The position numbers and the translations under genes were made by a program. Below, one piece after another: positions 20,180 to 33,928 of a DNA stretch of 64,000 nucleotides. The DNA lies in IMG/VR virus record IMGVR_UViG_3300020810_001156, positions 1 through 64,000 of that record. One strand, written 5' to 3'. How positions within the stretch are numbered: the first letter of the stretch is position 1; the number at the start of each line of letters is the position of its first letter. The notes below the pieces were generated by a model that saw nothing but the letters and a program-made list of their open reading frames with translations, ran no database searches and was not told the DNA's origin.

Positions 20180-22900
20180 TTAGAATCTATAAGTTAAACT
20201 TGCGTTCCAAGTTCTACCAAATCCGAACCATACTGAGTTTCTAACATCAACACCATTCCATGTAGTTGAACTAGCATCTGCATGAATGTTAGAGTTAGAT
20301 TCTGCAATATAAACAGCATCGAATAAGTTGTTGATATTAGCTCTCGCAGTAAATTTACCAAACTTACCAGTCAATCCTAAATCAACTAAACCATACGATG
20401 GTAATTTCATCGCACCTAAGTTATCAGGTTGTGTAAACTCCGAATCAGTAATAGAGTAGTCAGCGTATAATCCATCTACAAATCTATAATCTACATCAAC
20501 ATTAAATCTTTTACCTAACTTCTGGTCTACTCCTAAAACAGCTACGAATTGTGCAGCATCACCAACTTTAGCATCTTTAAGGTAAAGAGTACCTGTTCCG
20601 ATTGATTGTTGGTTATCATCAAATAATTCTGCTTCGAAATCTTTAGTATATCTCCAATCACCGATTGATAACATACCTCTGAATCTCGTTGCGTTTGATA
20701 ATTGATACTTACCTTCAAATTCGATACCATTATGTACTACATCGATATCTCTGAATTGTGCAAATCCATCTACACCTTGTTGGTTAGATAAACTTCTACT
20801 AACAAATCTATTACCCCAAGTTGTTGTGTAAGCGTTAATGTTAAACGATACATCTGAACCAATAAAACCATAACCCAATTCAAATGAACGAATTTCTTCG
20901 TTTTGTAAATCTGGATTAATTTCATTAGCAAAGTTAGGGAATACTGCATCAAACTGAGGTTGTCTTGAAATTACACCTGCGTTAAAGAACACATTTGATT
21001 TCTCATCGATATTGTAGTTAGCACCACCCTTTACATATCCACCACCTTGGTTTTGAACATCTGATTCTGGGTTACCTGGTTGGTCAAAATAATCGATTCT
21101 TTGGAATGCTTGGTTAGATAAACCTGCTTGTACTACTGCAGTTAATTTATCTCCCTGATATTCTACTAAACCATTAAGACCTTGCCATCCAACTTTACCA
21201 ACATTGTAGTAATCAATCTTCGGACCGTTTAGACCTGTATTCTGAAAAGGATTTGCTTCAACTAAAGTATTGATGATTTGACCGTTAGAGTTTTTGTTAC
21301 CCGTTGAGTAATAACCATCTAATCCCATTAAATCATTAAGAACTCTATAATGATAACCAGTATAGCTTCTTAAATCAACACCAATAGATGTTTTGAATTT
21401 ACCAAATTGTCCTTCTAAGTTTGAGATACCACCAACCCAGTTGTGTGAGTTCATAGATGCTCTTCTTACCAATACTGTTCTATTTACATTAGAATCTCTG
21501 AATCCATTCGAACCAATAAGTTGTCCTTGGAATGCTGAGATATCACCTGTATATCCTTCAGTAGTTGATTGGTTAGCTGCAACGATTGCATCGAAATCGA
21601 TGAATCCATTTGCATCTCTTGAACCTCTACCATTTTCTAAGTAGTGTTCTGTAAGGTCTTTTCTGAAAGGTAAGATATCAGTTGCAGCTGCACGATAGTT
21701 GTTACCACGAGGACCTGTACCACCACCTCTACCAGCAGAACCATATAATGATGTTGCTAATTTAAGGTTATCTGAAATGTTCCAATCCCAGTTGAAAGTT
21801 GCTAATGGTTTGTTGTAGAAGTTTCTTCTTAAAGAATACTCTTCTCCATTTAGTGTACCACCATTAGAATTCCATCTCTGGTCAATTCCTTCTTCACCAA
21901 AGTTTTGGTAATCTCTAATAGATACCCAAACATCTCTTTGATGGTGCCATTGACCTGCACCTAAGAATGAAAAGTTCAATTCATGGTCTGAACCTTCCGG
22001 TGCGTAACCAACTGCAGCGAAGTAAGTCCATCCTTCACCTGAAGTGTTGTAAACATATCCGTTACCAGCCCACTTAGATAATAAGAAAGATGATGCCCAT
22101 CCTTTATCATTCTTACCTGTGTTGTAAGAAACTCCTGTTTTGGTGTATCCATCGTTACCAACCATTTGAATTACTTTACCACCTTCAGTTTTCTGTGCGG
22201 CTTTAGTAAAAATGGAAACAGTTCCCCCAACTGAAGGAACTGCCAACTTAGATGCACCTAAACCTCTTTGGATTTGGATACCTGATGCTACATCGGTTAA
22301 ACCTTGCCAGTTACTCCAATATACCCATCCGTTCTCCATATCGTTAACGGGTTGTCCGTTAATAAGGAAAGATGTATTTCTTTGGTCAAATCCTCTAAGA
22401 GAGATTCTTGAATCACCATAACCACCACCTTGTTTAGTAGCATAAACCCCTGGAGTTTTATTCATAATTTCAGGGAATTCTTGGTTACCAACCTTTAGAG
22501 AAATCTCAGCTGGTGATATCGATGATACCGCTACTGGAGTTTCTCTTACTTTTGCTACATCAATTACCCCTGATGTAACCACCACTTCAGCTAACTGATT
22601 TAATGCAGTTGGTAAATTTACAATCATATCGTTCACAGCAACAACCTCAGTTGTTTGGAAACCAATAAAAGAAATTACTAAAGTGTTACCAGCGGATGCC
22701 CCAGAAATAGAAAAGAGACCATCAAAATCGGTTGTTGTACCATTTTGGGTCCCTTTGATTACTACCGTTGCGCCTGGTAGGGGTTCATTCGTTTCTGCAT
22801 CTACCACTGTTCCAGTGATTTGTGCGAAACCGGTCATTGAGGTGAAAACCATCAATAACCCAATCAAAAATTGCTTCATAATTGCTTGATTTTTGTTCAT
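20180..22900 (-). CDS. TonB-dependent outer-membrane receptor
   Basis: Signal peptide (FAQ), CarboxypepD-like domain (ITGTVVD..EPLPGATV), plug (SLRGF...INGQP), barrel ending ...SLTYRF. Confidence 0.9.
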   Translation of the reverse strand: MNKNQAIMKQFLIGLLMVFTSMTGFAQITGTVVDAETNEPLPGATVVIKGTQNGTTTDFDGLFSISGASAGNTLVISFIGFQTTEVVAVNDMIVNLPTALNQLAEVVVTSGVIDVAKVRETPVAVSSISPAEISLKVGNQEFPEIMNKTPGVYATKQGGGYGDSRISLRGFDQRNTSFLINGQPVNDMENGWVYWSNWQGLTDVASGIQIQRGLGASKLAVPSVGGTVSIFTKAAQKTEGGKVIQMVGNDGYTKTGVSYNTGKNDKGWASSFLLSKWAGNGYVYNTSGEGWTYFAAVGYAPEGSDHELNFSFLGAGQWHHQRDVWVSIRDYQNFGEEGIDQRWNSNGGTLNGEEYSLRRNFYNKPLATFNWDWNISDNLKLATSLYGSAGRGGGTGPRGNNYRAAATDILPFRKDLTEHYLENGRGSRDANGFIDFDAIVAANQSTTEGYTGDISAFQGQLIGSNGFRDSNVNRTVLVRRASMNSHNWVGGISNLEGQFGKFKTSIGVDLRSYTGYHYRVLNDLMGLDGYYSTGNKNSNGQIINTLVEANPFQNTGLNGPKIDYYNVGKVGWQGLNGLVEYQGDKLTAVVQAGLSNQAFQRIDYFDQPGNPESDVQNQGGGYVKGGANYNIDEKSNVFFNAGVISRQPQFDAVFPNFANEINPDLQNEEIRSFELGYGFIGSDVSFNINAYTTTWGNRFVSRSLSNQQGVDGFAQFRDIDVVHNGIEFEGKYQLSNATRFRGMLSIGDWRYTKDFEAELFDDNQQSIGTGTLYLKDAKVGDAAQFVAVLGVDQKLGKRFNVDVDYRFVDGLYADYSITDSEFTQPDNLGAMKLPSYGLVDLGLTGKFGKFTARANINNLFDAVYIAESNSNIHADASSTTWNGVDVRNSVWFGFGRTWNASLTYRF

Positions 22901-23149: not shown

Positions 23150-24529
23150 ATGTTAACATTACGAAATAATCAAATAGAACCTGTTAGAAAGGGTATTGAA
23201 TATTTTTCTGAAAATAAACCCGTTCCATCAATTATCGTAGCACCTACTGCTTTCGGTAAATCAATTGTTATTGCTCATATAGCAAAAGGTGTGGGAGAGA
23301 AGGTACTTGTTATTCAACCATCAAAAGAATTATTAGAACAAAACTATGAGAAGTTTACTAACTTAGGTGGTGAAGCAACTATCTATTCCGCTTCAATGGG
23401 TGAAAAAGAGATTGGTGATGTAACATATGCTACTATTGGTTCTATTGTTAATATAGCATATAAATTCAAAGAGTATGGAATATCTAAAGTAATCATCGAT
23501 GAGTGCGATAGGTTTCCCAGAGAACCAAATGGAATGTTAAGAAGATTCTTAAAGGGAGCTGGTATCATCCATACTTTAGGTCTAACTGCTACCCCTCTCA
23601 AACTTCAAACCAATATGGGTGAAGATGGTAAACCTTTCTCTAAGTTGGTTATGTTAACTAATCGTTCTAAGAAAGGTAACTTCTTTAAAAAGATTATTCA
23701 TGTTGCCCAAATTCAACAAATGGTTGAATCAAAGTTTTGGAGTAGATTAGAATATCAATCCTATGATTTCAATACTGGTGATTTGGTTTACAATACAACT
23801 GGTGCTGAGTATTCTAATTCATCTATAAAAAGAGCATATAAGAATCAAAAGATATCTTCTAAGATTGTAAAGAAGGTTGAAGAACTATACAATAGAAAAT
23901 CAATCTTAATAGCAGTTCCTTCAATCGATGAGGCTAAAGAATTAACTACAATGATTCCAAGTTGTAAAGCAGTTTACTCTGATATGCCAACTTCGGAAAG
24001 AAAAGAGATTATTGAAGATTTCAAAGCTGGTAGGTTAAGATGCATCGCTCAAGTTAATATCTTATCAGTTGGATTTGATTATCCAGAATTAGATTGTATC
24101 ATAACTGGTAGACCTACTGCTTCTTTGAGTTGGTGGTATCAATTTGTTGGTAGAGTTACTCGTATCCATCCAAACAAATCAGAAGGATTGGTTGTAGATT
24201 TCGTAGGAGCAGTTCCAAAGTTTGGAAAGGTTGAAGATATCTACTTCAAAGAAGATAAGGGAAGGTGGAGTATGTATGGTGAAGGAAAGAAACTACTAAC
24301 AGGTATCCCTATAAAAGAGATTGGTTTGCATATAGAAGGTGAACCATCACCATATGAAAAAGCCGCTGCATCACCATCAGTTAAGATGCCGTTTGGTAAA
24401 TATGCTGGTAGAGAGGTTAGAGAGATTCCTGCTCATTATAGAGAGTGGATGTTGACCAATTTTAATTGGACTCCATTTAACCAAAAGATTAAGGATGAAA
24501 TTCTAAGACTAAAATCTATTGGTATTTAA
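23150..24529 (+). CDS. SF2 DEAD/DEAH-like helicase (RadD/UvsW-like) with C-terminal DUF3820-like domain
   Basis: APTAFGKS, IIDECD, GLTATP, LSVGFD, QFVGRVTR; tail MPFGKY.G. Confidence 0.9.
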   Translation: MLTLRNNQIEPVRKGIEYFSENKPVPSIIVAPTAFGKSIVIAHIAKGVGEKVLVIQPSKELLEQNYEKFTNLGGEATIYSASMGEKEIGDVTYATIGSIVNIAYKFKEYGISKVIIDECDRFPREPNGMLRRFLKGAGIIHTLGLTATPLKLQTNMGEDGKPFSKLVMLTNRSKKGNFFKKIIHVAQIQQMVESKFWSRLEYQSYDFNTGDLVYNTTGAEYSNSSIKRAYKNQKISSKIVKKVEELYNRKSILIAVPSIDEAKELTTMIPSCKAVYSDMPTSERKEIIEDFKAGRLRCIAQVNILSVGFDYPELDCIITGRPTASLSWWYQFVGRVTRIHPNKSEGLVVDFVGAVPKFGKVEDIYFKEDKGRWSMYGEGKKLLTGIPIKEIGLHIEGEPSPYEKAAASPSVKMPFGKYAGREVREIPAHYREWMLTNFNWTPFNQKIKDEILRLKSIGI

Positions 24530-24547: not shown

Positions 24548-24695
24548 ACAAATACTCATTGTATAGTATCTAATACTCAACGAGTATAATCGTTATCTCA
24601 ATTAAGTTTATCGGAGGGTTCTCCTCTGGTGTTTTATAAATCGTTTTATTATTAAGTTATACAATTGGTTACTTTAACTATAAAGTAGGCATTTT

Positions 24696-25175
24696 ATGTA
24701 TGCGTTAAGATTTTTAGGAATTGTTTTATTCTTAATATTGGGTGTATCAAGTATATCCGCACAAGAAATAAAGGTAGGAGATGTTACAAACGAAATCCGA
24801 TTAGGACCTTTCGCTGGTAATGCAAATCTTGCTATGGGAGTTCGTAATATTACCGAAGAACTTCTTATGGATTTGGATTACGATTTATCCCCATACGCAG
24901 AAACACAAATTAATATAAGACTTGTATTCTTTGATGTAAAGAATATTGGTAAGAGTATTGGTGTATATCATAATAAGGTATCAGCAACTCAAATCATTGC
25001 AATAGGAGAATTACAAGTTGGTAAGAAAGTAAAGAAACGAGTTACTAAAAAAGGAGTGAGTAAAGAAATATCTAACTCCACTTTGGTGGTAGCATCAGAT
25101 GGTTCGTTTAATCAACAAACGGCATCAAGTGCTGTAAAAAAGGTTTTAGTAGAAATAATTAAAGATTTATTATGA
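24696..25175 (+). CDS. exported CsgG/TolB-N-like alpha/beta protein
   Basis: Signal peptide (SAQ); LAMGVRNITEELL helix and terminal S.AVKK.L helix resemble the CsgG fold. Confidence 0.5.
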   Translation: MYALRFLGIVLFLILGVSSISAQEIKVGDVTNEIRLGPFAGNANLAMGVRNITEELLMDLDYDLSPYAETQINIRLVFFDVKNIGKSIGVYHNKVSATQIIAIGELQVGKKVKKRVTKKGVSKEISNSTLVVASDGSFNQQTASSAVKKVLVEIIKDLL

Positions 25176-26848
25176 AAAAAATTTTAACATTATTAGTTAG
25201 TGTATTGTGTACACTAAGTGTCTTTGGACAATCTCGTATGGATTATTCGAGAGTAAATACAGTAACCCAAGTAGGGGATACTTTAATTGTAAAATATCAA
25301 TACTTTAAAGGAACTGATGTTAATGGTAATGATATGCCAGATGCGACACTTTATCAGTTTGATATACAACATAACAATAAGTTATTGGATGTTATTGAAA
25401 ATGATTGGCAACCAACATCTAACTCTTCACAAAAAGCAGTAAACACTTGGAATGGATATAAGTTTACTATTGATTCTGAAAAAGACCAAACTGATTTTGA
25501 TGGGCAATATCTAAGTTGGTTAAGTGGAGATGCTACCTATGGAACAAATGCTGATTGGTCAGTACAAAGGGTAACTTATCAAGATGTAACTTCATTGGAA
25601 AATGGTGATGAGATTATGAAGGTATCTTATAAGATTAAAGATAAGGCAAATTCAAACTATACTGATTATACTAATTTAATCAATGTGAATTGGGCAAACT
25701 ATAAAGAAGCAGATGGTACTCAGATTGATGTAACTGGTCAATCTAATATAGGGTTAACAGGTATTCAAGGTGGTGATGCTGGTAATGTTTCTATTTCAGT
25801 ATCATCGAATGTAATCACAAATAATATTGGTGATGGTGGTGATTTCTCTTATACAATTTATAACAAAGGTGAAAATACTAATCCAATAGCAAGTGGTAAC
25901 TTTGATGCTGCTGGTGATGCAACTGTAACTGGTTTGGAAAATGATGTTGAGTATGATTTATATGTTTCAATTGATTCATCTAAAGAGTATTTAGATAATG
26001 TAGTAACTGTATCTGATTTATCATTGGTGTTTGCAGAAGCAATAGGAGCAGGCGATTCTCCAAATGGTATTTCAACTACATTTGATTATTACATTCAAAG
26101 TATTTTAGCGAATGTTGTAGGTACTTCTATTCCAAATGGTGGTGATATAAACTTTGATGATTCGTATGAGATACTTGCTTATCTACAAGGTGTAACATCT
26201 ACCAATACAACATTCATTTCAAAAACAGGTGAAGTGTATAATGTAAGTGGTATCAAATCTACTTTTGGTGATGAAGTAAATGGTATAGCAACCGTTTCAC
26301 CAACATTCAAACCAACTGATAGTGATAAATCGTTCCAATTTGCTCATGCAATTTCTGGTGATGTAAACTTCTCACATGGATTTGAACCAACATCAACTAA
26401 TGCGGATATACCAACCTCAGCACAATCAACTACTACTCAAAGAAGTATGATGGCAAGGGGTGCAAAACTTAATCCTGAAACTGCTAATTTAGATTTAACA
26501 TCTGAATTAAAAGATGGTCAAGTAATCTTCACAATAGGTTCGGAGGTTGAGGAAATGATTGGTGCTCAGTTTAACATTGTTTACGATAGAACGAGATTAG
26601 TATTAGATGATGTAATATTTGATACTGGTAATACAATGACCAACTTCTCAAATCACATTGAAGAAAATGGAAAAATAAATATAGGTTCTTTTGACCAAAA
26701 CTTTGAGGCAACTGTTAAGACAGGTACTCCTTATAAGTTAATCTTTACACCAACCGTACAGTTACAAAACACATCAGGTTTAATTACTTTCAAAGTTAAT
26801 GAAGGTGTTAAAGCAGATGGTACACAAATTAAATTTATAATGGAGTAA
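25172..26848 (+). CDS. exported cohesin- and dockerin-like domain protein
   Basis: Signal peptide (FGQ); cohesin-like N-terminus (YQFDIQHN..LL) and C-terminus (GAQFNIVYD); dockerin-like VTVSD and GDVNFSH segments. Confidence 0.6.
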   Translation: MKKILTLLVSVLCTLSVFGQSRMDYSRVNTVTQVGDTLIVKYQYFKGTDVNGNDMPDATLYQFDIQHNNKLLDVIENDWQPTSNSSQKAVNTWNGYKFTIDSEKDQTDFDGQYLSWLSGDATYGTNADWSVQRVTYQDVTSLENGDEIMKVSYKIKDKANSNYTDYTNLINVNWANYKEADGTQIDVTGQSNIGLTGIQGGDAGNVSISVSSNVITNNIGDGGDFSYTIYNKGENTNPIASGNFDAAGDATVTGLENDVEYDLYVSIDSSKEYLDNVVTVSDLSLVFAEAIGAGDSPNGISTTFDYYIQSILANVVGTSIPNGGDINFDDSYEILAYLQGVTSTNTTFISKTGEVYNVSGIKSTFGDEVNGIATVSPTFKPTDSDKSFQFAHAISGDVNFSHGFEPTSTNADIPTSAQSTTTQRSMMARGAKLNPETANLDLTSELKDGQVIFTIGSEVEEMIGAQFNIVYDRTRLVLDDVIFDTGNTMTNFSNHIEENGKINIGSFDQNFEATVKTGTPYKLIFTPTVQLQNTSGLITFKVNEGVKADGTQIKFIME

Positions 26849-26850
26849 AT

Positions 26851-27228
26851 ATGAAAAAAGTATTAGTATTATTATCTTTGGTTTTATTAATGGGATGTGT
26901 TAAGGATGAAATCCTTTCTCCTATTGATAATACAGTAGAGGTTCCTGAATCATTGGTTATTGGTGATTTACAAGGTATTAAAGTAGAATCAACAATCGTA
27001 ACCGATGAAGTTAAGATGAATATCAAACTTCCTTATACGGGAACTTATAGAGTTAAAATTAGAGATATAGGAAAAGAACTTATATCTCAAGAAAAGTTAC
27101 AAGCAAACGAAGGAGATAATATTCTTAAAGTATATGTTTCTTCTTTATCAAACGATGGTTATACTTTAGAGTTGACCGATGATAATCACGATATCATAGG
27201 TATAACTTCAATCGTAGTAAACAACTAA
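26851..27228 (+). CDS. lipoprotein consisting of a T9SS C-terminal sorting domain-like Ig fold
   Basis: Lipobox LMGC then VKDE; IRDIGKELI...GDN.LKV.VSSL..GYTLEL resembles type A CTD. Confidence 0.6.
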   Translation: MKKVLVLLSLVLLMGCVKDEILSPIDNTVEVPESLVIGDLQGIKVESTIVTDEVKMNIKLPYTGTYRVKIRDIGKELISQEKLQANEGDNILKVYVSSLSNDGYTLELTDDNHDIIGITSIVVNN

Positions 27229-27238
27229 ATATAAAATT

Positions 27239-27541
27239 ATGAGTGAAGAAAAAGAAGTAGGGTTCTTCGGACAATTGAAAAATCAAATCATAACTGGTGC
27301 AGGGGTTATCCTAACTGGTTTGGGTACAATGTTTATGGATGAAGTAAAAACATTCATTGGTATTGGAGATGAAGAAGAAACCAAAACAGAACAAGTTCAA
27401 GTTGAACAAAAGCAAGAGGTCAATGTAAGTGGACCTGAAATCATTATCAATATTCCTGAACAAAAAACAGAAACTAAAACAATTATTAAAGAAGTTCCTG
27501 TTAAAGAAAAGAAGGAAAAAGAAGAAGAAATAGATTGGTAA
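27239..27541 (+). CDS. membrane-anchored protein with charged low-complexity tail
   Basis: One TM segment; KTIIKEVPVKEKKEKEEE. Confidence 0.75.
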   Translation: MSEEKEVGFFGQLKNQIITGAGVILTGLGTMFMDEVKTFIGIGDEEETKTEQVQVEQKQEVNVSGPEIIINIPEQKTETKTIIKEVPVKEKKEKEEEIDW

Positions 27542-27570: not shown

Positions 27571-27807
27571 ATGATTATGTTAAAATTCTTTAGAAATTTT
27601 TGGGAACTAAACACTATGCCGATGGTGGATATGTGGAATGATGCCGAAACTGTTAATGAAAAAATAGTAGCAGTATTTTTTAGCATTTGGATTGCTATAT
27701 TGTTGGTATTGTTTTATGTAGGAATGACGGGATTATTATACGGATTAATATCAGGAGAAGCAGATGTAGCAAATGCAACATTTGGTATCTTTGATTATTG
27801 TTGTTAA
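27571..27807 (+). CDS. small membrane protein
   Basis: Long hydrophobic segment. Confidence 0.65.
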   Translation: MIMLKFFRNFWELNTMPMVDMWNDAETVNEKIVAVFFSIWIAILLVLFYVGMTGLLYGLISGEADVANATFGIFDYCC

Positions 27808-28008: not shown

Positions 28009-28725
28009 ATGAAAAAATTATTACTATTGTTGGTATGTGTATTTTTAACACAAACCACATTTGCGCAAGTTGGAAGTATTAAAGCAGAAGAATATGTTGC
28101 TGAATTCGAAAAGAAAAAATCAATTGATGATGTTTCGGATTATGATGGTGATATGTTGCCTGTTGCACTACTCGATGTAGGTATCTCAGATGCTCTCTAC
28201 GAAACTTATCCTGAATTAAGGGATGGTAGAGTGGGTTTAGGACTTACAAACATTGTAATCGAATATTTGGATTGGACAAATAGATTTGAATTTGTTGAAG
28301 AAAAATCTGCAATCAAAGATAGAATGAAATCACAATGGGTTGCTTCTCGTAAAGGTGTATCTGAAAATAAAGTTTATGGTATGGGTAAGATTACTCTTGC
28401 TGAATACTTTGTAACTATTGAGATATACGATTTCTCAGTATCGGAAGATGAAGTACTTTCACTTAAAGAAGGTTCTAAACAAACTCAAACAACTCGTTTA
28501 GGATTACAAGTAAGATTTACCGATGCTGAAACTGGTAGATACTTGGTAGGTTCTGGTTTAGGAGATGCTAAGACTGTTAAAACTCAAGAAGGTTTAATTG
28601 GTTTAGATGTAGATGAAATCGCATTTAGAGAATCAGGTATCGGAGTTGCAACTCGTAAAGCATTAGAAACAGCTTCAGCAAGAATTGTGGCAAGAATGAT
28701 ACGAAAAGGAATCTTCCCAAACTAA
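28009..28725 (+). CDS. csgG: CsgG-family (curli assembly/transport) protein
   Basis: Signal peptide; RFEFVEEK, AEYFVTIEIYDF, LGLQVRFTDAETG...GSG.G, G.ATRKALETA motifs. Confidence 0.7.
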   Translation: MKKLLLLLVCVFLTQTTFAQVGSIKAEEYVAEFEKKKSIDDVSDYDGDMLPVALLDVGISDALYETYPELRDGRVGLGLTNIVIEYLDWTNRFEFVEEKSAIKDRMKSQWVASRKGVSENKVYGMGKITLAEYFVTIEIYDFSVSEDEVLSLKEGSKQTQTTRLGLQVRFTDAETGRYLVGSGLGDAKTVKTQEGLIGLDVDEIAFRESGIGVATRKALETASARIVARMIRKGIFPN

Positions 28726-28728
28726 TGG

Positions 28729-30339
28729 ATGAAAAAACTACTATCGATACTATTTTTTATATTCGTAACACAAGTTAGTTACGGACAGACATTTACACAA
28801 ACCTTTGTAGATAGATGTACTGGTGAAGTACAAGTAGTAACTGCCAACTTTCAAACGGGTTCGGCAGTTGTTTCATTTTATAATAAAGTTAGAGTATTTA
28901 CATATCAAGAATATGTAAACGGAGAATTACACCAATGGTTGATGACTACTTATGCTTGGTGGCAAGCACTCTCCCCATGTTCAGCTGCACAAACTCAAAC
29001 TACCAACGCACAAAACGCAGCGAATAACGCCACAAATAACACTACAAACACAACCAATACAAATACCTCATCAACTAGCAACACATCTTCATCAAGTAGT
29101 AGTTCATCATCAAGTTCGTCTGGAGGGGATTCTGGTAGTTCATCTTCAAGTTCGTCAGGTGGTTCAGACGGTGGTGGTGATGGAAGTAGTTCATCAGGTG
29201 GTTCAGAAGGTAGTGGAGAAGGTAGTGGAGAAGGTAGTGGAGAAGGTTCTGGCGAAGGAAGTGGAGAAGGTAGTGGAGAAGGTAGTGGAGAAGGTGAAGG
29301 TTCTGGTGAAGGTTCCGGTGAAGGTGAAGGTGAAGGAGAAGGTAGTGGAGAGGGTGAAGGTGAAGGAGAAGGTTCTGGTGAAGGAGAAGGAGAAGGTTCT
29401 GGTGAAGGTGAAGGAGAAGGTGAAGAAGAGTCATCTGAAGAAAGTTCAGAGGAAGAATCAAGTGAAGAGGAATCATCAGAAGAATCGGAAGAAGAAAGTT
29501 CAGAAGAAGAATCCGAAGAAGAGAGTGAGGAGGAATCAGAAGAAGAAGAGAGTGAAGAAGAATCTGAGGAAGATGAGGAAGAATCTGATGAGGATGATGA
29601 AGAAGAATCCGAAGAAAGTGATGGTGAAGATGAAGAAGATGAGGAAGATGAAAAGGAAAAAAAGTTTATGCCTATTCAATTAAAGGCGGATATGATGGCT
29701 CAACAAGCTCTTACTTTGGATTATAATGCGGTTCTTAATATCGGTGCTTCTATGAGTTCTATTTTTGGTGATAGAAGTTATGGTGCTAATCTTATGATAT
29801 ATGATAATCTTAAACAAGCAAACATTTCACTTAACACATCAGGTGTTACTATGAATGATAATTACGAAGTAACATGGGTAGATGGTGTTTCGGTTTCTTA
29901 TATGAGAAACTATAAGATGAATGCTATATCAGCATCAGCAAGTAGAATGAAACCATTAGGTAAGTGGGGAACTGTTGGTGTGGGTATTAACTATTCTTAT
30001 ATGACGGGTAAAGACCAATTAGGGCAACAACTTCCTAAGTCTTGGATGTTAGGATATAATGTTGTTTATTCTAATATGATAAAAATAACTGATAGAATAA
30101 TGTATTCACCAGCATTGGTTGGAGTTAGTTCTCCATTATCATATACACAAATGCAAGAAACTGATATTGTAGATTTTTCTACAATCAATAAAGATTTAAT
30201 GGTTATAGTAGCAAACCCATTCACAATACAATTAACTAATAGATTTTCGTTCAATGTAGGGTGGACAGTTATAATGAGTACGAGTGAATATCTACCGATA
30301 TTAAACTCGTTTATGATAGGTTCTAAAATACCATTTTAA
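28729..30339 (+). CDS. exported protein: small N-domain, long S/G/E low-complexity stalk, C-terminal beta-barrel-like domain
   Basis: Signal peptide (YGQ); GSGE and EEES repeats; alternating beta strands ending in Phe. Confidence 0.8.
29206..29660 (+). repeat. coding low-complexity repeats (GSGE / GEGE / EEES)
   Basis: Tandem GAAGGTAGTGGA-type and GAAGAA-rich units. Confidence 0.9.
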
Positions 30340-30341
30340 TT

Positions 30342-30890
30342 ATGAATAAAAAAATAGAAATTTCTGTATGGTTACTTTGTTTATTAGTAATCGGATTTTG
30401 GTTTATTGGATATACTACACAATACCAAAGACCAGCTAAAATAGAATATGTAGAAGTAGTAAAAGAAGTAGAAGTAGTTGTTACTGATACAATCTATGTA
30501 GATAAAATCATAGAAGAAAAAATATATGTACCAAAATACATTACACAAATCGAAAGAGATACAATTAAAGTAGAAGTACCAGTAGAAGTAATTGTTGAAA
30601 AACAAATACCAATTACTAAAAAAGTATATGTGGATAAAGTAGTAGATAGACTTGTTGAAGTTCCCGTCAACGAGAAAAAACTATTTTTAGGGTTTGGTTA
30701 TCAATACGATTTTGAAAATTATTTTAGTGGAGCAAATATAAAGTTAATTCACAAAACACCTAAAGATAAAATGTTTAGTTTAGATGTTGGTTTCAGAAAT
30801 GATTTGTTAGATAAAGAAACTAATGTAGGAAGATTAAGACCTTACATTGGAGGTTCTATATATTTTAGAATTGATAATCCAAACAAATAG
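30342..30890 (+). CDS. membrane-anchored protein with V/E/K-rich repeats and C-terminal beta strands
   Basis: TM helix; KVEVPVEVIVEK and VDRLVEVPV repeats. Confidence 0.75.
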   Translation: MNKKIEISVWLLCLLVIGFWFIGYTTQYQRPAKIEYVEVVKEVEVVVTDTIYVDKIIEEKIYVPKYITQIERDTIKVEVPVEVIVEKQIPITKKVYVDKVVDRLVEVPVNEKKLFLGFGYQYDFENYFSGANIKLIHKTPKDKMFSLDVGFRNDLLDKETNVGRLRPYIGGSIYFRIDNPNK

Positions 30891-32920
30891 TGAAAAAACT
30901 TCTTTACATATTATTATTTTTACCCACTTTAGTTTTTGGACAAAGTGGTGAAGGATATGTAAATTACAAATCCTATAAAACTCACTATGGGAATGGTTAT
31001 AGTTCAACCTATAATGGATACACATATAGTGGATTAGCTGATAACGCAACCGAGTTACAAGCAATGTTAGATGTAAATCACCCTGGTACATCTTTAACAC
31101 ATGAAGGTGAAGCAGTAGCTAATTCAAGTGAAGGATTAAAAGGAGGTAGACCTTCCAGATGGGGGAATGATTTTTATGCCGTTTATCACTATGGTTGGTT
31201 TCAACCACAAGAAACAGGAACTTACAGATTTACCCTACAATCAGATGATGGTAGTGGTTTATGGATAGATGGAGACTTAAAACTATTTAGACCTTGTTGT
31301 GGTGCATCCTCTGTGGATGTTTCCTTAACATCAGGACAATGGTACTTCTTTGAAACAAAATGGCAAGAATATACAGGTGGTGATTATATGTACTTTATGT
31401 ACTCACCTCCAAGTAATGCTAATGTGTTTTATGTTGGTGACCAAACACAGTATCTTAAAGTAACTAATATAGAACCAGAAGAAGAACCAATAAGTCCTGA
31501 AGTAGATTTAGATTTAGAATTCCATTCTCAATTAGCACCAGAAGAATATAGATTCAGAGTTTACTATGATGGAACTTCTGCACAAGATGGAACTGAATGG
31601 TTGAATACATCTACAATGAACTCTTCTTATTATTTAGATGATGATGGTAGTAAGGATATTACTGATTATCTAAATTTAGTCAAAATGGCAGATGGTAAGA
31701 AGGCAACTACAACTGGTGGTTGGACGGAGTGGTGTGTGGTTTATGATTATGATACAACTAACAAACGATACAGGGTTGGTATTGATAAAAGAGAATTTCC
31801 AAGTGGATTTACTTTTACTGATTTGAAACAATTAAAGTTGTTTGATTTATGGGATGGTGAAATAACTTATATGTCAGATGATATCTATTGGGCAAATTAT
31901 TACATCTATACTGATACTCAATTTGATTTCACAAGTTCAACCTTTTCATCTTATATAAGAGATGCAAATGGATTCTATGGAATAAAAGCAGATTTCTCAT
32001 TTGAAGATGTTGAAATATACAAAGGACATAAAGTATCATTTATGAATCCATCTACCAATATAGAAGGATGGACAGCAGAAGAATTTATGGATGATTATAT
32101 TACAGTTGCAGATGTAGTTGCAGGATTTAACGAATTAGCTGGTGGTGGAATTAATGGTGGATTAAAAGGAGATTTGAATGGAGTCCAATTACAAAACTCA
32201 GATGTTAACCAAGATGGTGAATTTGATTTTCAAGATAGTCAAATAGGATTATCTTTTTTGACTGGTGGTGATACTCCGTTTGATGGAAGTTTATATGATA
32301 TAATGAGAATAGTTCCTAAATCAGAATATGATAATACTACAACTACTAATTGGAAAACACAAACAAATAAATCACCATCAACATCGTTTACGTTTAGTCT
32401 TATAGATACGATACAAACTTTAGAGTATAAGGTTTCTTTTATAGGTGATGTAAACCTTTCACATTCTGCTCCCCAAACAGGTACTTCACCCGCTACCCAA
32501 TCTACTATATCTTCAAGAATGATGAGTGTAAGAAATTCATCTACTCAAAACAATACTTCGTTAGAGGTTGATTTAGATATTGAAAAAACTGAAGAACATA
32601 TAATCATTACATTAGATTTGCCTGAGAATAATTTTAATCTAATTGGTTCTGAATTTAGAATTGGGTTTGATAATGAACGAGTAGAATATGATAAGTTAGA
32701 AACTAATACAATGATGAATAGCTTTGATGCTAAGAGGAGTTCTTATGTTAAGGTGGGTTCTATATCAACTGATGGTTCTCTAACCTTAAACAGCGGCGTT
32801 CAATATAAAATTTATTTTAAACCAATACAATCATTTGAATCAACATTAGGATTGGTATCGGTTAAGAAATCAGAAGTTGTTGATGTAAATGCTAATATAA
32901 TAAATGTAATTATAAAATGA
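30890..32920 (+). CDS. exported PA14-domain protein with dockerin- and cohesin-like domains
   Basis: Signal peptide (FGQ); GWFQPQETGTYRFTLQSDDGS.LWIDG (PA14); DVNQDGEFDFQD; GDVNLSH; C-terminal cohesin-like domain. Confidence 0.75.
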   Translation: MKKLLYILLFLPTLVFGQSGEGYVNYKSYKTHYGNGYSSTYNGYTYSGLADNATELQAMLDVNHPGTSLTHEGEAVANSSEGLKGGRPSRWGNDFYAVYHYGWFQPQETGTYRFTLQSDDGSGLWIDGDLKLFRPCCGASSVDVSLTSGQWYFFETKWQEYTGGDYMYFMYSPPSNANVFYVGDQTQYLKVTNIEPEEEPISPEVDLDLEFHSQLAPEEYRFRVYYDGTSAQDGTEWLNTSTMNSSYYLDDDGSKDITDYLNLVKMADGKKATTTGGWTEWCVVYDYDTTNKRYRVGIDKREFPSGFTFTDLKQLKLFDLWDGEITYMSDDIYWANYYIYTDTQFDFTSSTFSSYIRDANGFYGIKADFSFEDVEIYKGHKVSFMNPSTNIEGWTAEEFMDDYITVADVVAGFNELAGGGINGGLKGDLNGVQLQNSDVNQDGEFDFQDSQIGLSFLTGGDTPFDGSLYDIMRIVPKSEYDNTTTTNWKTQTNKSPSTSFTFSLIDTIQTLEYKVSFIGDVNLSHSAPQTGTSPATQSTISSRMMSVRNSSTQNNTSLEVDLDIEKTEEHIIITLDLPENNFNLIGSEFRIGFDNERVEYDKLETNTMMNSFDAKRSSYVKVGSISTDGSLTLNSGVQYKIYFKPIQSFESTLGLVSVKKSEVVDVNANIINVIIK

Positions 32921-33258
32921 GAAAGATATTATTATTTATATTATTAATTTTGGTATCTTGTCAACCTGATGAGTTAATGGTTGTTGAACCATATCCACAA
33001 TACGAAATGATATTTGAGGAATCAATATCTAAAGTGGTTGATGGACAAGAGTTCTCATTTGAGGTATCAACAACTGAAGAATATACGTTGATTATATCAC
33101 ACCAAAATAGTTCAGTAATATCAAAAGAATCATTCATGCCAACAATGGGATTGAATACTAAAATCCTTTATACAAAATCTTTACCTAAAGGAGAATTAAA
33201 CTTAATATTAATTTTATCTAAAGAAGAAATCCAAAAAACTACTATTATTATAGAATAA
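32917..33258 (+). CDS. lipoprotein with T9SS CTD-like Ig fold (paralog of 26851)
   Basis: Lipobox LVSC then QPDE; similar strand pattern ending KTTIIIE. Confidence 0.55.
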   Translation: MRKILLFILLILVSCQPDELMVVEPYPQYEMIFEESISKVVDGQEFSFEVSTTEEYTLIISHQNSSVISKESFMPTMGLNTKILYTKSLPKGELNLILILSKEEIQKTTIIIE

Positions 33259-33271: not shown

Positions 33272-33928
33272 ATGTTAGTATATGATTTCAAAAATGTGGG
33301 AAAGATTTATGGATTGACCAATAATGATTCGGTTGAACCAAAACATGCTGACCGTATTGCTGAAATTCCTAAATCTATTTTTTCTGGGTTTAAGTATGAG
33401 AGGTATAAAAATATGCCTCCATATAAAAACGAATCTATGAGAACAATGCAGGAATTAATTAGATTATCACAAATACCATCTAATGATGAATTTACTTTGA
33501 AGATGGATAAAGTGAAAGAATCTTTTAAAAATTTATGTGAAGAATTAGATATTGATTTCCCAAAAGAAATGGTAAAAGATTTAAAAGATGCTGCTAGTGG
33601 TGTGATATTAGATTTAAAATATCACTACAATAGACCGAGGCCTTACAAATTAGCACCTTTACTTAATATAGAATTAGATACTAACGAAATCGAAGATACA
33701 ACATCAGATTCACCATCTTATCCTTCTGGACACGCAGCTCAAGGTATTCTGATATCCAATTATTTAGCTTACAAAAATCCTTTACATAGAGGAAAGATTT
33801 TGAGGTTAGGTAGAGATATAGCAAAGAGTAGAGTTACTGCAAAAGTTCACTATCAATCGGATGTAGATTTTGGTTCAATGATTGGAAACGATATGTTCAA
33901 CTATTTAAAAGAAAACAAATTAATATAA
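33272..33928 (+). CDS. PAP2-superfamily phosphatase/haloperoxidase-like protein
   Basis: KYHYNRPRP, PSYPSGHA and SRV.AKVHY.SD motifs. Confidence 0.9.
   Translation: MLVYDFKNVGKIYGLTNNDSVEPKHADRIAEIPKSIFSGFKYERYKNMPPYKNESMRTMQELIRLSQIPSNDEFTLKMDKVKESFKNLCEELDIDFPKEMVKDLKDAASGVILDLKYHYNRPRPYKLAPLLNIELDTNEIEDTTSDSPSYPSGHAAQGILISNYLAYKNPLHRGKILRLGRDIAKSRVTAKVHYQSDVDFGSMIGNDMFNYLKENKLI

What the first reader, a model, noticed from the sequence alone, without database searches (positions are those of the whole stretch)
26851..27228. Stand-alone T9SS C-terminal-domain-like lipoproteins
Seen: 26851 and 32917 are a lipobox plus a single ~80-aa Ig-like domain with type A CTD hallmarks but no YPNP motif. 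The upstream scaffolds lack a CTD. Established: CTDs are normally fused to cargo and route it through the Bacteroidota T9SS, which also supports gliding and phage adsorption. Inference: trans-acting sorting adaptors, or decoys that jam the host T9SS (superinfection exclusion).
Basis: inference. Interest (0 to 1): 0.7.

Follow-up and report, generated by a model that had tools for sequence, protein, structure and literature searches.

The report
Phage lipoproteins made of a secretion-tag fold
A 252-kb marine phage of Flavobacteria-like hosts encodes two small lipoproteins whose only folded part is a diverged copy of the C-terminal tag that these bacteria use for type 9 secretion. Each lipoprotein gene sits directly behind a large sugar-binding scaffold protein that lacks the tag, so it most likely anchors or escorts that protein, but this has not been tested.

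Summary
Genes 26851-27228 (LP1, 125 aa) and 32917-33258 (LP2, 113 aa) are real and conserved, each with an invariant lipobox cysteine.

- **Fold:** LP1 folds confidently (pLDDT 89) into a seven-strand beta-sandwich. Its nearest structural and sequence relatives are the extreme C-terminal type A sorting domains (CTDs) of Bacteroidota T9SS cargo.
- **Homology:** LP2 is a homologue of LP1 (hhalign 95%).
- **Membership:** Both score below the curated CTD HMM cut-offs and lack the PNP motif. LP1 also lacks the near-invariant C-terminal lysine.
- **Upstream proteins:** They lack a CTD. Both share a C-terminal module, which in the 558-aa protein models as a cohesin fold.

New points:
- In all 15 related viral loci the lipoprotein gene abuts or overlaps a lectin-dockerin-cohesin gene.
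- Both lipoproteins carry the Bacteroidota lipoprotein export signal right after the cysteine (C-x-K-D-E; C-Q-x-D-E), conserved in about 230 homologues. This predicts surface exposure independent of T9SS.
- No stand-alone copy was found in 301 Flavobacteriaceae genomes.

Best reading: dedicated surface-lipoprotein anchors or adaptors for the scaffolds. The decoy idea is not supported. A trans-acting T9SS signal remains possible but untested. This is a new variant of a known kind.

The parts
24696..25175 (+). First gene of cassette A: a 159-aa exported protein with a type I signal peptide and no assigned family.
   Evidence: ORF. No Pfam, NCBIfam or PHROG hit. A homologue sits in the same position in the related loci that extend far enough upstream. 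A terminator-like hairpin at 24609-24631 precedes it.
25172..26848 (+). 558-aa exported scaffold protein. It has an N-terminal region of unknown fold, a dockerin-like EF-hand loop, a GDVNxSHS motif with an S/T-rich linker, and a C-terminal cohesin module (residues 433-558 = 26468-26845). It has no CTD.
   Evidence: The C-terminal ~190 aa are shared with the 676-aa paralogue (E 5e-15). Cohesin evidence: Pfam E 8e-4, sub-threshold; ESM features 0.91; AF2 pLDDT 82-93 with all 50 top PDB hits being cohesins.
26851..27228 (+). LP1, 125 aa. Signal peptide is 26851-26895, the lipobox Cys16 is 26896-26898, the export-signal motif V-K-D-E is 26899-26910, a conserved tether follows, and the CTD-like beta-sandwich covers residues 42-125 (26974-27225). 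The start codon lies 2 nt after the stop of the 558-aa gene.
27239..27541 (+). 100-aa protein with an N-terminal membrane helix, an E/K/T-rich tail and a conserved C-terminal (I/L/V)(D/E)W. It is conserved downstream of LP1.
   Evidence: Homologues in the same position in the related loci that extend far enough downstream. No Pfam hit.
27571..27807 (+). 78-aa membrane protein, a conserved neighbour.
   Evidence: Homologues in the related loci that extend far enough downstream.
28009..28725 (+). First gene of cassette B: a 238-aa exported protein. It looks CsgG/HfaB/LpoB-like by language-model features only.
   Evidence: ESM Atlas score 0.94 with 180 shared features to CsgG/HfaB clusters. The Pfam CsgG HMM finds nothing in the genome, so this is a lead, not an assignment.
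28729..30339 (+). 536-aa exported protein. It has a conserved N-terminal 85 aa, ~230 aa of S/G/E low-complexity sequence, and a C-terminal ~210 aa rich in alternating strands that ends in Phe (outer-membrane-barrel-like by inspection).
   Evidence: Translation. Conserved in relatives; in L002 it lies after LP2. No PorP/SprF or other Pfam match.
30342..30890 (+). 182-aa membrane-anchored protein, an accessory gene of cassette B. It is present in L005/L006 and absent in L002 and L008.
30890..32920 (+). 676-aa exported scaffold protein. It has an N-terminal PA14/GLEYA lectin-like domain, a dockerin-like loop (32126-32239), a GDVNxSHS motif with linker, and a C-terminal module homologous to the cohesin of the 558-aa protein (about 32543-32917). 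It has no CTD.
   Evidence: PA14 E 1.3e-5. Relatives have PA14 at E 5e-18 or a C-type lectin at E 7e-6. Dockerin_1 is sub-threshold.
32917..33258 (+). LP2, 113 aa. The lipobox Cys15 is 32959-32961, the export-signal motif Q-P-D-E follows, then a very conserved tether (residues 15-35), then a CTD-like domain at about residues 36-113 (33022-33255). Its ATG overlaps the TGA of the 676-aa gene (ATGA).

Best explanation
LP1 and LP2 are phage-encoded outer-membrane lipoproteins made in infected marine Flavobacteriales-type cells.

**Proposed route and role**
1. Each is exported by Sec and lipidated at the invariant cysteine.
2. Because of the acidic lipoprotein export signal directly after that cysteine, it is most likely flipped to the cell surface.
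3. Its single folded domain is a diverged member of the type A CTD / DUF3244 beta-sandwich superfamily. It has been detached from cargo and given its own lipid anchor.
4. It works as the dedicated membrane-anchoring or adaptor subunit of the protein encoded immediately upstream. That protein is a Sec-exported lectin-dockerin-cohesin scaffold with no anchor or sorting domain of its own.
5. Together with the other exported proteins of the two cassettes, the pair decorates the envelope of the infected cell with carbohydrate-binding scaffolds.

**Shown:** gene reality, lipobox, fold and homology, cohesin fold of the partner, strict gene pairing, presence and conservation of the export motif, and restriction to viral contigs among what was searched.

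**Inferred:** physical binding of the lipoprotein to the scaffold, surface location, and the biological purpose.
For: - **Pairing.** In the window and in all 15 related loci examined, the lipoprotein gene lies 0-4 nt from, or overlaps, a gene whose C-terminal module is homologous to the cohesin-ending region. This holds even where the partner is only ~24% identical. Two paralogous pairs have been kept side by side.
- **Lipid anchor.** The cysteine is invariant.
- **Export signal.** LP1 C-V-K-D-E equals the optimal C-X-K-(D/E)2-X, and LP2 C-Q-P-D-E fits Q-x-(D/E)2, both as defined experimentally in a Flavobacteriaceae species (PMC5080379). Positions +4 and +5 are acidic in about 100% of 231 close homologues. 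In 40 of 47 divergent cluster representatives the stretch after the cysteine has at least two acidic residues and a net negative charge.
- **Tether.** The stretch between lipid and domain is conserved, and in LP2 it is more conserved than the domain (0.4 against 1.1 bits entropy). It is disordered in the isolated model. Both features are as expected for a segment that binds a partner.
- **Partner architecture.** The partner ends in a cohesin fold and carries lectin domains but no CTD.
- **Precedent (from my own knowledge of the T9SS literature).** Uncleaved CTDs already serve as anchoring modules in T9SS, for example the PorU and PorZ CTDs. Both are among the structural matches.
- **Phage-specific.** The family is not found as a stand-alone protein in 301 Flavobacteriaceae genomes.
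Against: - No direct evidence of binding exists. The complex prediction gave no verdict, because an unrelated control scored the same.
- How the CTD-less, non-lipidated scaffold would cross the outer membrane is unexplained. The CsgG-like lead for the 238-aa neighbour rests on language-model features only and fails the Pfam HMM.
- The export signal was defined in cellular species, not in this unknown host.
- Gene adjacency alone is weak evidence of binding.
Confidence: 0.42

Rival explanations
1. Trans-acting T9SS sorting signal. The lipoprotein binds the upstream scaffold in the periplasm. Its CTD-like domain is recognised by the host SprA-PorV translocon, and the complex is carried out through T9SS. 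The lipid tail then replaces the usual A-LPS attachment.
For: - The domain is homologous to, and folds like, type A CTDs and sits at the extreme C-terminus.
- According to the translocon structures, CTD motifs specify the fold rather than the contacts, and the binding pocket is plastic (PMC10994853).
- The partner lacks any CTD yet has extracellular-type modules.
- Cellular proteins with a cohesin directly followed by a type A CTD exist, so the phage pair looks like such a protein split in two.
- LP2 keeps the conserved lysine.
Against: - It scores below all curated CTD cut-offs.
- LP1 lacks both the lysine and PNP.
- A conserved lipoprotein export signal offers a T9SS-independent route.
- Piggy-back export of a non-covalent partner by T9SS is not described in the papers read here.
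- PorU cleavage would sever the domain from its lipid.
Confidence: 0.2
2. T9SS decoy for superinfection exclusion. The tethered CTD-like domain occupies PorV/SprA and blocks secretion of gliding adhesins and other T9SS cargo that serve as phage receptors.
For: The domain has the CTD fold and homology. A membrane tether would keep it at the translocon. The general precedent of phage lipoproteins that mask receptors (T5 Llp, Cor) comes from my own knowledge.
Against: - It does not explain the obligatory pairing with a large cohesin protein in every locus, or the two diverged pairs.
- It does not explain the conserved export signal that would remove the protein from the periplasmic side.
- LP1 lacks the lysine that contacts PorV.
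Confidence: 0.08
3. Periplasm-facing outer-membrane lipoprotein of an envelope or lysis complex. LP acts with the neighbouring membrane proteins (100 aa, 78 aa) and exported proteins inside the periplasm, for instance as a spanin-like or polysaccharide-export accessory.
For: The 100-aa and 78-aa membrane proteins are conserved just downstream of LP1. In relative L002 a GH19 lysozyme-like gene lies between them.
Against: - LP is a well-folded 85-aa domain, not a short proline-rich o-spanin.
- LP2 has no such downstream partners.
- The gene order is lipoprotein before membrane protein.
- The export motif argues for the surface.
Confidence: 0.12
4. Generic DUF3244-type small lipoproteins with no specific link to the upstream gene or to T9SS. 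The resemblance to CTDs would reflect only common descent of a widespread Bacteroidota Ig-like domain.
For: - DUF3244 is hit by more family members than Por_Secre_tail (24 against 18 of 58, all sub-threshold).
- DUF3244 structures match at Z 8.4.
- Generic MG/FN3 domains score similarly.
Against: The gene pairing is invariant across deep divergence, with overlapping stop and start codons. The nearest cellular sequence relatives are true C-terminal CTDs.
Confidence: 0.1

Closest known systems
T9SS type A C-terminal sorting domain (TIGR04183 / Pfam PF18962 Por_Secre_tail), e.g. the CTDs of mirolase (8qb1), PorU (6za2), NucA/FspA bound to SprA-PorV (8glk, 8glj)
   Same: Same seven-strand beta-sandwich, and collinear sequence alignment over the whole domain. 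This includes the 'v-I-x-D-x-x-G-x-x-v' and 'G-x-N...L..G-Y' blocks. It sits at the extreme C-terminus of a Sec-exported protein. Detectable profile-level homology.
   Different: - No passenger domain: the domain is preceded only by a lipidated cysteine and a ~20-25-residue tether.
- No PNP motif.
- LP1 lacks the near-invariant lysine, and LP2 lacks G-x-Y.
- Below the curated HMM cut-offs.
- Encoded by a phage.
- Carries a lipoprotein export signal.
DUF3244 (PF11589), small Bacteroides proteins with one Ig-like domain (3d33 BVU_0276, 4g5a BT_1867), function unknown
   Same: Small stand-alone protein with an N-terminal leader plus one beta-sandwich of the same superfamily. It gives the best Pfam E-value for LP1 (1.7e-3) and is hit by 24 of 58 family members. 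Structural Z is 8.4.
   Different: Scores stay below the cut-off of 25 bits. DUF3244 is cellular and gut-associated with no known cohesin partner. Whether DUF3244 proteins are lipidated was not checked here.
Bacteroidota surface lipoproteins carrying the lipoprotein export signal (e.g. C. canimorsus MucG, SusD/E/F-type proteins; PMC5080379)
   Same: Lipobox followed by C-X-K-(D/E)2 or Q-x-(D/E)2. The Ig-like domain is tethered to the lipid.
   Different: Much smaller, phage-encoded, CTD-type domain. The carbohydrate-binding modules are on a separate, non-lipidated partner protein.
Type B CTD protein plus cognate PorP/SprF shuttle operons, and the PorU-PorV / PorZ-PorQ anchoring pairs
   Same: Adjacent genes encode a large surface protein and the small partner that anchors it. 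An uncleaved CTD is used as a docking module (PMC12618676; PorU and PorZ structures among the matches).
   Different: Here the CTD-like module is on the small partner, not on the large protein. No PorP/SprF homologue is present.
Cohesin-dockerin scaffoldins of cellulosomes and non-cellulosomal cohesins
   Same: The upstream proteins end in a cohesin fold and contain dockerin-like calcium-loop motifs.
   Different: They are phage-encoded in a Gram-negative host and have N-terminal lectins instead of enzymes. The HMM scores are sub-threshold. The anchoring partner is a lipoprotein rather than an SLH or sortase module.

Membership tests
T9SS type A CTD (TIGR04183 / PF18962) | Score above the curated HMM cut-off | tested here: not met
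   LP1 scores PF18962 18.0 bits against 27 and TIGR04183 13.1 against 23. LP2 has no hit. At E<0.01, 18 of 58 family members hit PF18962, with a best E of 1.6e-5.
T9SS type A CTD (TIGR04183 / PF18962) | Seven-strand Ig-like beta-sandwich superposable on solved CTDs | tested here: met
   AF2 pLDDT is above 95 over residues 40-125. Matches: 8qb1 Z 10.3 with rmsd 1.9 A over 77 residues, 6za2 Z 9.9, 8glk_D Z 9.2. The AFDB top 30 all align to C-terminal domains, over a third of them annotated as T9SS targets or sorting-domain proteins. Generic Ig folds score almost as high.
T9SS type A CTD (TIGR04183 / PF18962) | Located at the extreme C-terminus of a protein with a Sec signal peptide | tested here: met
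   The domain ends at the last residue of both lipoproteins.
T9SS type A CTD (TIGR04183 / PF18962) | Fused to an N-terminal passenger (cargo) that it carries out | tested here: not met
   Only a lipidated cysteine and a 20-25-residue tether precede the domain.
T9SS type A CTD (TIGR04183 / PF18962) | Conserved motifs: PNP in the first strand, G-x-Y, and a near-invariant lysine in the last strand | tested here: inconclusive
   In alignment A6 with five genuine CTDs, PNP is absent in both. G-x-Y is present in LP1 (DGYTLEL) and absent in LP2. The lysine is absent in LP1 and present in LP2 (QKTTIIIE). The importance of the lysine is taken from PMC10994853.
T9SS type A CTD (TIGR04183 / PF18962) | T9SS-dependent export and removal by the PorU sortase | not testable with these tools
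   Needs expression in T9SS-proficient and T9SS-deficient strains.
DUF3244 (PF11589) | Score above the curated cut-off (25 bits) | tested here: not met
   LP1 scores 18.7 bits, E 1.7e-3. At E<0.01, 24 of 58 members match, with a best E of 3.7e-5.
DUF3244 (PF11589) | Fold like 3d33 / 4g5a | tested here: met
   Z 8.4 to both, over 79-81 residues.
Bacteroidota surface-exposed lipoproteins (LES-dependent) | Lipobox cysteine followed by C-X-K-(D/E)2-X or Q-x-(D/E)2 | tested here: met
   LP1 is C-V-K-D-E and LP2 is C-Q-P-D-E. Positions +4 and +5 are acidic in ~100% of 231 close homologues. The motif definition comes from PMC5080379.
Bacteroidota surface-exposed lipoproteins (LES-dependent) | Demonstrated exposure on intact cells | not testable with these tools
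   Needs protease shaving or antibody labelling.
Phage o-spanin | Short, proline-rich, unstructured OM lipoprotein whose gene is embedded in or follows an i-spanin gene | tested here: not met
   LP1 has a confidently folded 85-residue domain. It precedes the membrane protein rather than following it, and LP2 has no such neighbour.
Cohesin (PF00963), for the upstream partner | HMM above cut-off, and a nine-strand jelly-roll fold | tested here: inconclusive
   The HMM gives 20 bits against 24.1, E 8e-4. The fold criterion is met: all 50 best PDB hits are cohesins, E down to 1.4e-6.

The most novel reading that the evidence does not exclude
The phage has split a T9SS substrate into two genes. A lipid-anchored, cargo-less CTD acts in trans: it binds the cohesin-ending lectin scaffold and pilots it through the host SprA-PorV translocon. 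It escapes sortase removal and leaves the complex lipid-anchored on the surface. This would be the first trans-acting T9SS signal and the first viral hijack of T9SS for remodelling the infected cell's surface.
Probability: 0.15. Interest if true: 0.85.

Novelty: new variant of a known kind. Interest (0 to 1): 0.6.

Why it matters
T9SS sorting domains are known only as covalent C-terminal tags on cargo, or as uncleaved anchors of PorU and PorZ. Here a whole clade of abundant marine jumbo phages keeps a cargo-less, lipidated version of that domain. It is always coupled to a CTD-less lectin-dockerin-cohesin protein.

- If it is a surface anchor, these phages build their own carbohydrate-binding surface scaffold on infected Flavobacteria. 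These hosts are key marine polysaccharide degraders. The same phage also carries a host-like TonB-dependent receptor and a PAP2 phosphatase.
- If the domain still talks to T9SS, it would be a natural tool for trans-targeting or blocking this secretion system.

Either way the pair is small, well defined and directly testable in Flavobacterium johnsoniae.

Tried and rejected
- **Complex prediction.** The cohesin-containing region (residues 269-558) was folded with mature LP1. Result: no verdict. The score was 0.81, but LP1 scored 0.82 with an unrelated control protein, so this counts neither for nor against binding.
- **Phage database.** Megablast of the region and tblastn of LP1 found no match.
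- **PHROGs.** No family for either lipoprotein or for the scaffolds.
- **Foldseek against PDB for LP1.** Only generic Ig/FN3/MG-type hits, with no CTD in the top 50. The CTD link came from the AFDB clusters, VIA-align and the Atlas.
- **HMM profile of the family against PDB sequences.** Nothing significant.
- **CsgG and PorP/SprF.** The CsgG HMM (PF03783) and the PorP/SprF HMM (PF11751) found nothing in the phage genome. The CsgG-like label for the 238-aa neighbour is therefore only an ESM-feature lead. My own impression that the 159-aa protein is of the same kind has no support.
- **Second dockerin-like hit** at 100.3 kb of the genome. It is an EF-hand-like loop in a helical, signal-less protein in front of a gene that by inspection resembles a prohead protease. 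It was judged irrelevant.
- **Frameshift fusion.** I considered that each lipoprotein might be joined to the upstream protein by a frameshift. I rejected this because each lipoprotein begins with a canonical lipoprotein signal peptide with an invariant cysteine, which would have no role inside a fusion.
- **The search for related loci with the broad alignment A3** failed because no stretch was conserved enough.

Full report
**Setting.** The window is the first 64 kb of a 252,603-bp viral record that CheckV rates complete. GC content is about 32%. The finding lies in a block of + strand genes between a RadD-like helicase (23150-24529) and nucleotide-metabolism genes: a metallophosphatase and a dCMP deaminase. 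A SusC-like TonB-dependent receptor on the minus strand (20180-22900) is 65-76% identical to chromosomal receptors of marine Flavobacteriales, Polaribacter and related MAGs. The host is therefore most probably a marine member of the Bacteroidota, a phylum that typically has a T9SS (inference).

**The observation.** Both ORFs are real.
- LP1 (26851-27228, 125 aa) and LP2 (32917-33258, 113 aa) start with typical lipoprotein signal peptides ending in L-M-G-C and L-V-S-C.
- LP1 has 396 homologues and LP2 has 142 at E<=0.01, all from marine metagenomes and viral contigs.
- The cysteine is invariant in the alignments.
- The two proteins barely match by BLASTP (E 7.4). They are linked by profile comparison (hhalign 95%, E 2e-8) and by a continuum of intermediate 105-128-aa lipoproteins found in 1.8 billion cluster representatives.

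**Fold and homology.**
- With a 58-sequence alignment, AlphaFold2 gives LP1 a mean pLDDT of 89.4. Residues 40-125 exceed 95 and form a seven-strand sandwich. Residues 17-39 are of low confidence.
- Against AFDB fold clusters, all 30 best matches align the domain to the last 85-100 residues of their proteins. Over a third of these are annotated as T9SS targets or sorting-domain proteins, with rmsd as low as 1.2 A over 85 residues.
- An exhaustive comparison with 48,161 solved chains ranks the CTD of mirolase first (8qb1, Z 10.3). The PorU CTD (Z 9.9), the translocon-bound NucA and FspA CTDs (Z 9.2, 7.9), the PorZ CTD (Z 8.0) and the two DUF3244 structures (Z 8.4) are also listed. Complement MG domains and FN3 domains score Z 8-10 too, so structure alone does not single out the CTD. 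Foldseek against PDB shows only such generic hits.
- Sequence evidence settles the kinship. The LP1 profile reaches proteins that carry PF18962 well above threshold.
- A profile of the domain alone found six matches at E<=1e-4 in 301 Flavobacteriaceae genomes, where about 0.03 would be expected by chance. Each match is the final ~80 residues of a 628-1983-aa ORF, most with recognisable CTD motifs such as YPNP, G-x-Y or the C-terminal lysine.
- The ESM Atlas places LP1 in viral clusters of 122-126 aa. In some of these, 11-55% of members hit PF18962. The next nearest are bacterial CTD proteins.
- An alignment with five genuine CTDs is collinear over the whole domain.

**Membership.** The lipoproteins are not canonical type A CTDs.
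- LP1 scores 18 bits against the cut-off of 27 (PF18962) and 13 against 23 (TIGR04183). DUF3244 scores slightly better (18.7 against 25). LP2 hits nothing. Across 58 family members, 24 hit DUF3244 and 18 hit Por_Secre_tail at E<0.01.
LP1 keeps G-x-Y but lacks the near-invariant lysine of the last strand. LP2 keeps the lysine but not G-x-Y.
- According to the substrate-bound translocon structures, the CTD motifs specify the fold. Only that lysine contacts PorV consistently, and the binding pocket is plastic (PMC10994853).
- Recognition by T9SS is therefore neither excluded nor implied.

**The partners.**
- That region of the 558-aa protein, modelled with 17 diverse sequences, gives a nine-strand domain with pLDDT 82-93. 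All 50 of its best PDB matches are cohesin modules, with E down to 1.4e-6. The Pfam Cohesin hit is sub-threshold (E 8e-4), and ESM features agree.
- Upstream lie dockerin-like calcium loops (DVNQDGEFDFQD; sub-threshold Dockerin_1).
- At the N-termini are lectin domains: PA14/GLEYA in the window and relatives, and a C-type lectin in relative L002.
- No PF18962 match exists anywhere in the phage genome, so the scaffolds indeed lack a CTD.

**Gene pairing.**
- LP1 starts 2 nt after the stop of the 558-aa gene, and the ATG of LP2 overlaps the TGA of the 676-aa gene.
- I examined 15 related viral or metagenomic loci, including family members only 29-38% identical to LP1. In every one, the lipoprotein gene abuts or overlaps a gene whose C-terminal module is homologous to the cohesin region. 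This holds even when that protein is only ~24% identical overall.
- The wider order is also conserved: 159-aa exported protein, scaffold, LP1, (extra lipoprotein), 100-aa and 78-aa membrane proteins, 238-aa exported protein, 536-aa low-complexity/barrel-like protein, (182 aa), scaffold, LP2. In L002 the 536-aa homologue follows LP2 instead.

Directly after the lipidated cysteine, LP1 reads V-K-D-E and LP2 reads Q-P-D-E.
- The lipoprotein export signal that sends Bacteroidota lipoproteins to the cell surface was defined experimentally in Capnocytophaga canimorsus (Flavobacteriaceae). Its optimal form is C-X-K-(D/E)2-X, with Q-A-(D/E)2 as an alternative. Acidic variants function in Flavobacterium and Bacteroides (PMC5080379).
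- Positions +4 and +5 are acidic in essentially all 231 close homologues. Of 47 divergent cluster representatives, 40 have at least two acidic residues and a net negative charge in the stretch just after the cysteine.
- The tether between lipid and domain is also conserved. In LP2 it is more conserved than the domain itself (0.4 against 1.1 bits entropy).

**Interpretation.**
- The strict pairing, the lipid anchor, the export signal and the conserved tether fit best with a dedicated surface-lipoprotein anchor or adaptor for the cohesin-ending lectin scaffold (confidence about 0.4).
- The weak point is how the scaffold would cross the outer membrane. The 238-aa neighbour resembles CsgG/HfaB only by language-model features and fails the HMM. 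The 536-aa protein looks barrel-like only by inspection, with no PorP/SprF match.
- The trans-acting T9SS signal idea would solve that problem. It gains some colour from cellular proteins with a cohesin fused to a type A CTD, but it is untested (about 0.2).
- The decoy idea leaves the pairing and the export signal unexplained (about 0.08).
- A spanin-like or periplasmic role (about 0.12) is suggested only by the neighbouring small membrane proteins and by a GH19 gene in one relative. It is contradicted by the folded domain.
- The complex prediction returned no verdict and is not used as evidence.

**Novelty.**
- Phage proteins with ordinary cargo-fused CTDs are already annotated in viral structure libraries. 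Small stand-alone domains of this superfamily exist in bacteria as DUF3244.
- What is new is the combination: a cargo-less, lipidated, export-signal-bearing CTD-type domain that is restricted to viral contigs among what was searched and is obligatorily paired with a CTD-less cohesin scaffold.
- I class it as a new variant of a known kind, of moderate to good interest, with a clear bench test.

Noticed in passing
window 20180-22900 (-): A full-length SusC-like TonB-dependent receptor (CarboxypepD_reg, Plug and barrel domains). It is the only minus-strand gene in the region. It is 65-76% identical to chromosomal receptors of marine Flavobacteriales/Polaribacter MAGs. This looks like a host-derived auxiliary gene and a clue to the host.
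   Followed up: partly
window 28729-30339 (+): A 536-aa exported protein with an extreme ~230-residue run of S, G and E repeats (SGEG..., EEES...). The run lies between a conserved 85-aa head and a strand-rich tail that ends in Phe. No family was found. In relative L002 the gene sits after LP2 and lacks most of the repeat.
   Followed up: partly
window 28009-28725 (+): A 238-aa exported protein resembles CsgG/HfaB/LpoB proteins by ESM features (0.94). It fails the Pfam CsgG HMM and has no match among PDB sequences.
   Followed up: partly
window 33272-33928 (+): A PAP2-superfamily phosphatase (E 6e-11) is encoded directly after LP2. This is another envelope-lipid-modifying candidate in the same block.
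   Followed up: no
L007:7383-8075, L008:7395-7895, L009:7350-7850, L015:6345-6821, L018:2173-2718: Relatives carry an additional 158-230-aa lipoprotein (C-A/T-N-P-S-M-E-R-G...) between LP1 and the 100-aa membrane protein. Some have C-x-x-T-P thrombospondin-like motifs. It is absent from this window.
   Followed up: no
L002:4044-4655: In one relative a GH19 lysozyme-like gene (E 5e-8) lies between the homologues of the 100-aa and 78-aa membrane proteins. This hints that those two may be lysis-related. No such gene is at that place in the window.
   Followed up: no
L006-L010 upstream of cassette A; L002:12253-15903: Relatives have glycosyltransferase-like and UDP-galactopyranose-mutase-like ORFs (identified by inspection) just upstream of cassette A. 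They also carry sulfotransferase and 2OG-Fe(II) oxygenase genes nearby. The envelope cassettes therefore sit among surface-glycan-modifying genes.
   Followed up: no
G000:C1:231063-231212 (outside the window): A weak match (E 1.4e-3) to the signal-peptide and lipobox part of the family profile, inside a 208-aa open frame. It is possibly another phage lipoprotein and was not examined.
   Followed up: no
AFDB hits A0A1A9LFB9 (109 aa), A0A4Q3RU79 (107 aa), A0A1Q3P507 (162 aa): Short cellular entries that consist of little more than a CTD-like domain appear among the fold matches. Stand-alone CTD-like proteins may therefore also exist in bacteria, or these entries may be fragments.
   Followed up: no
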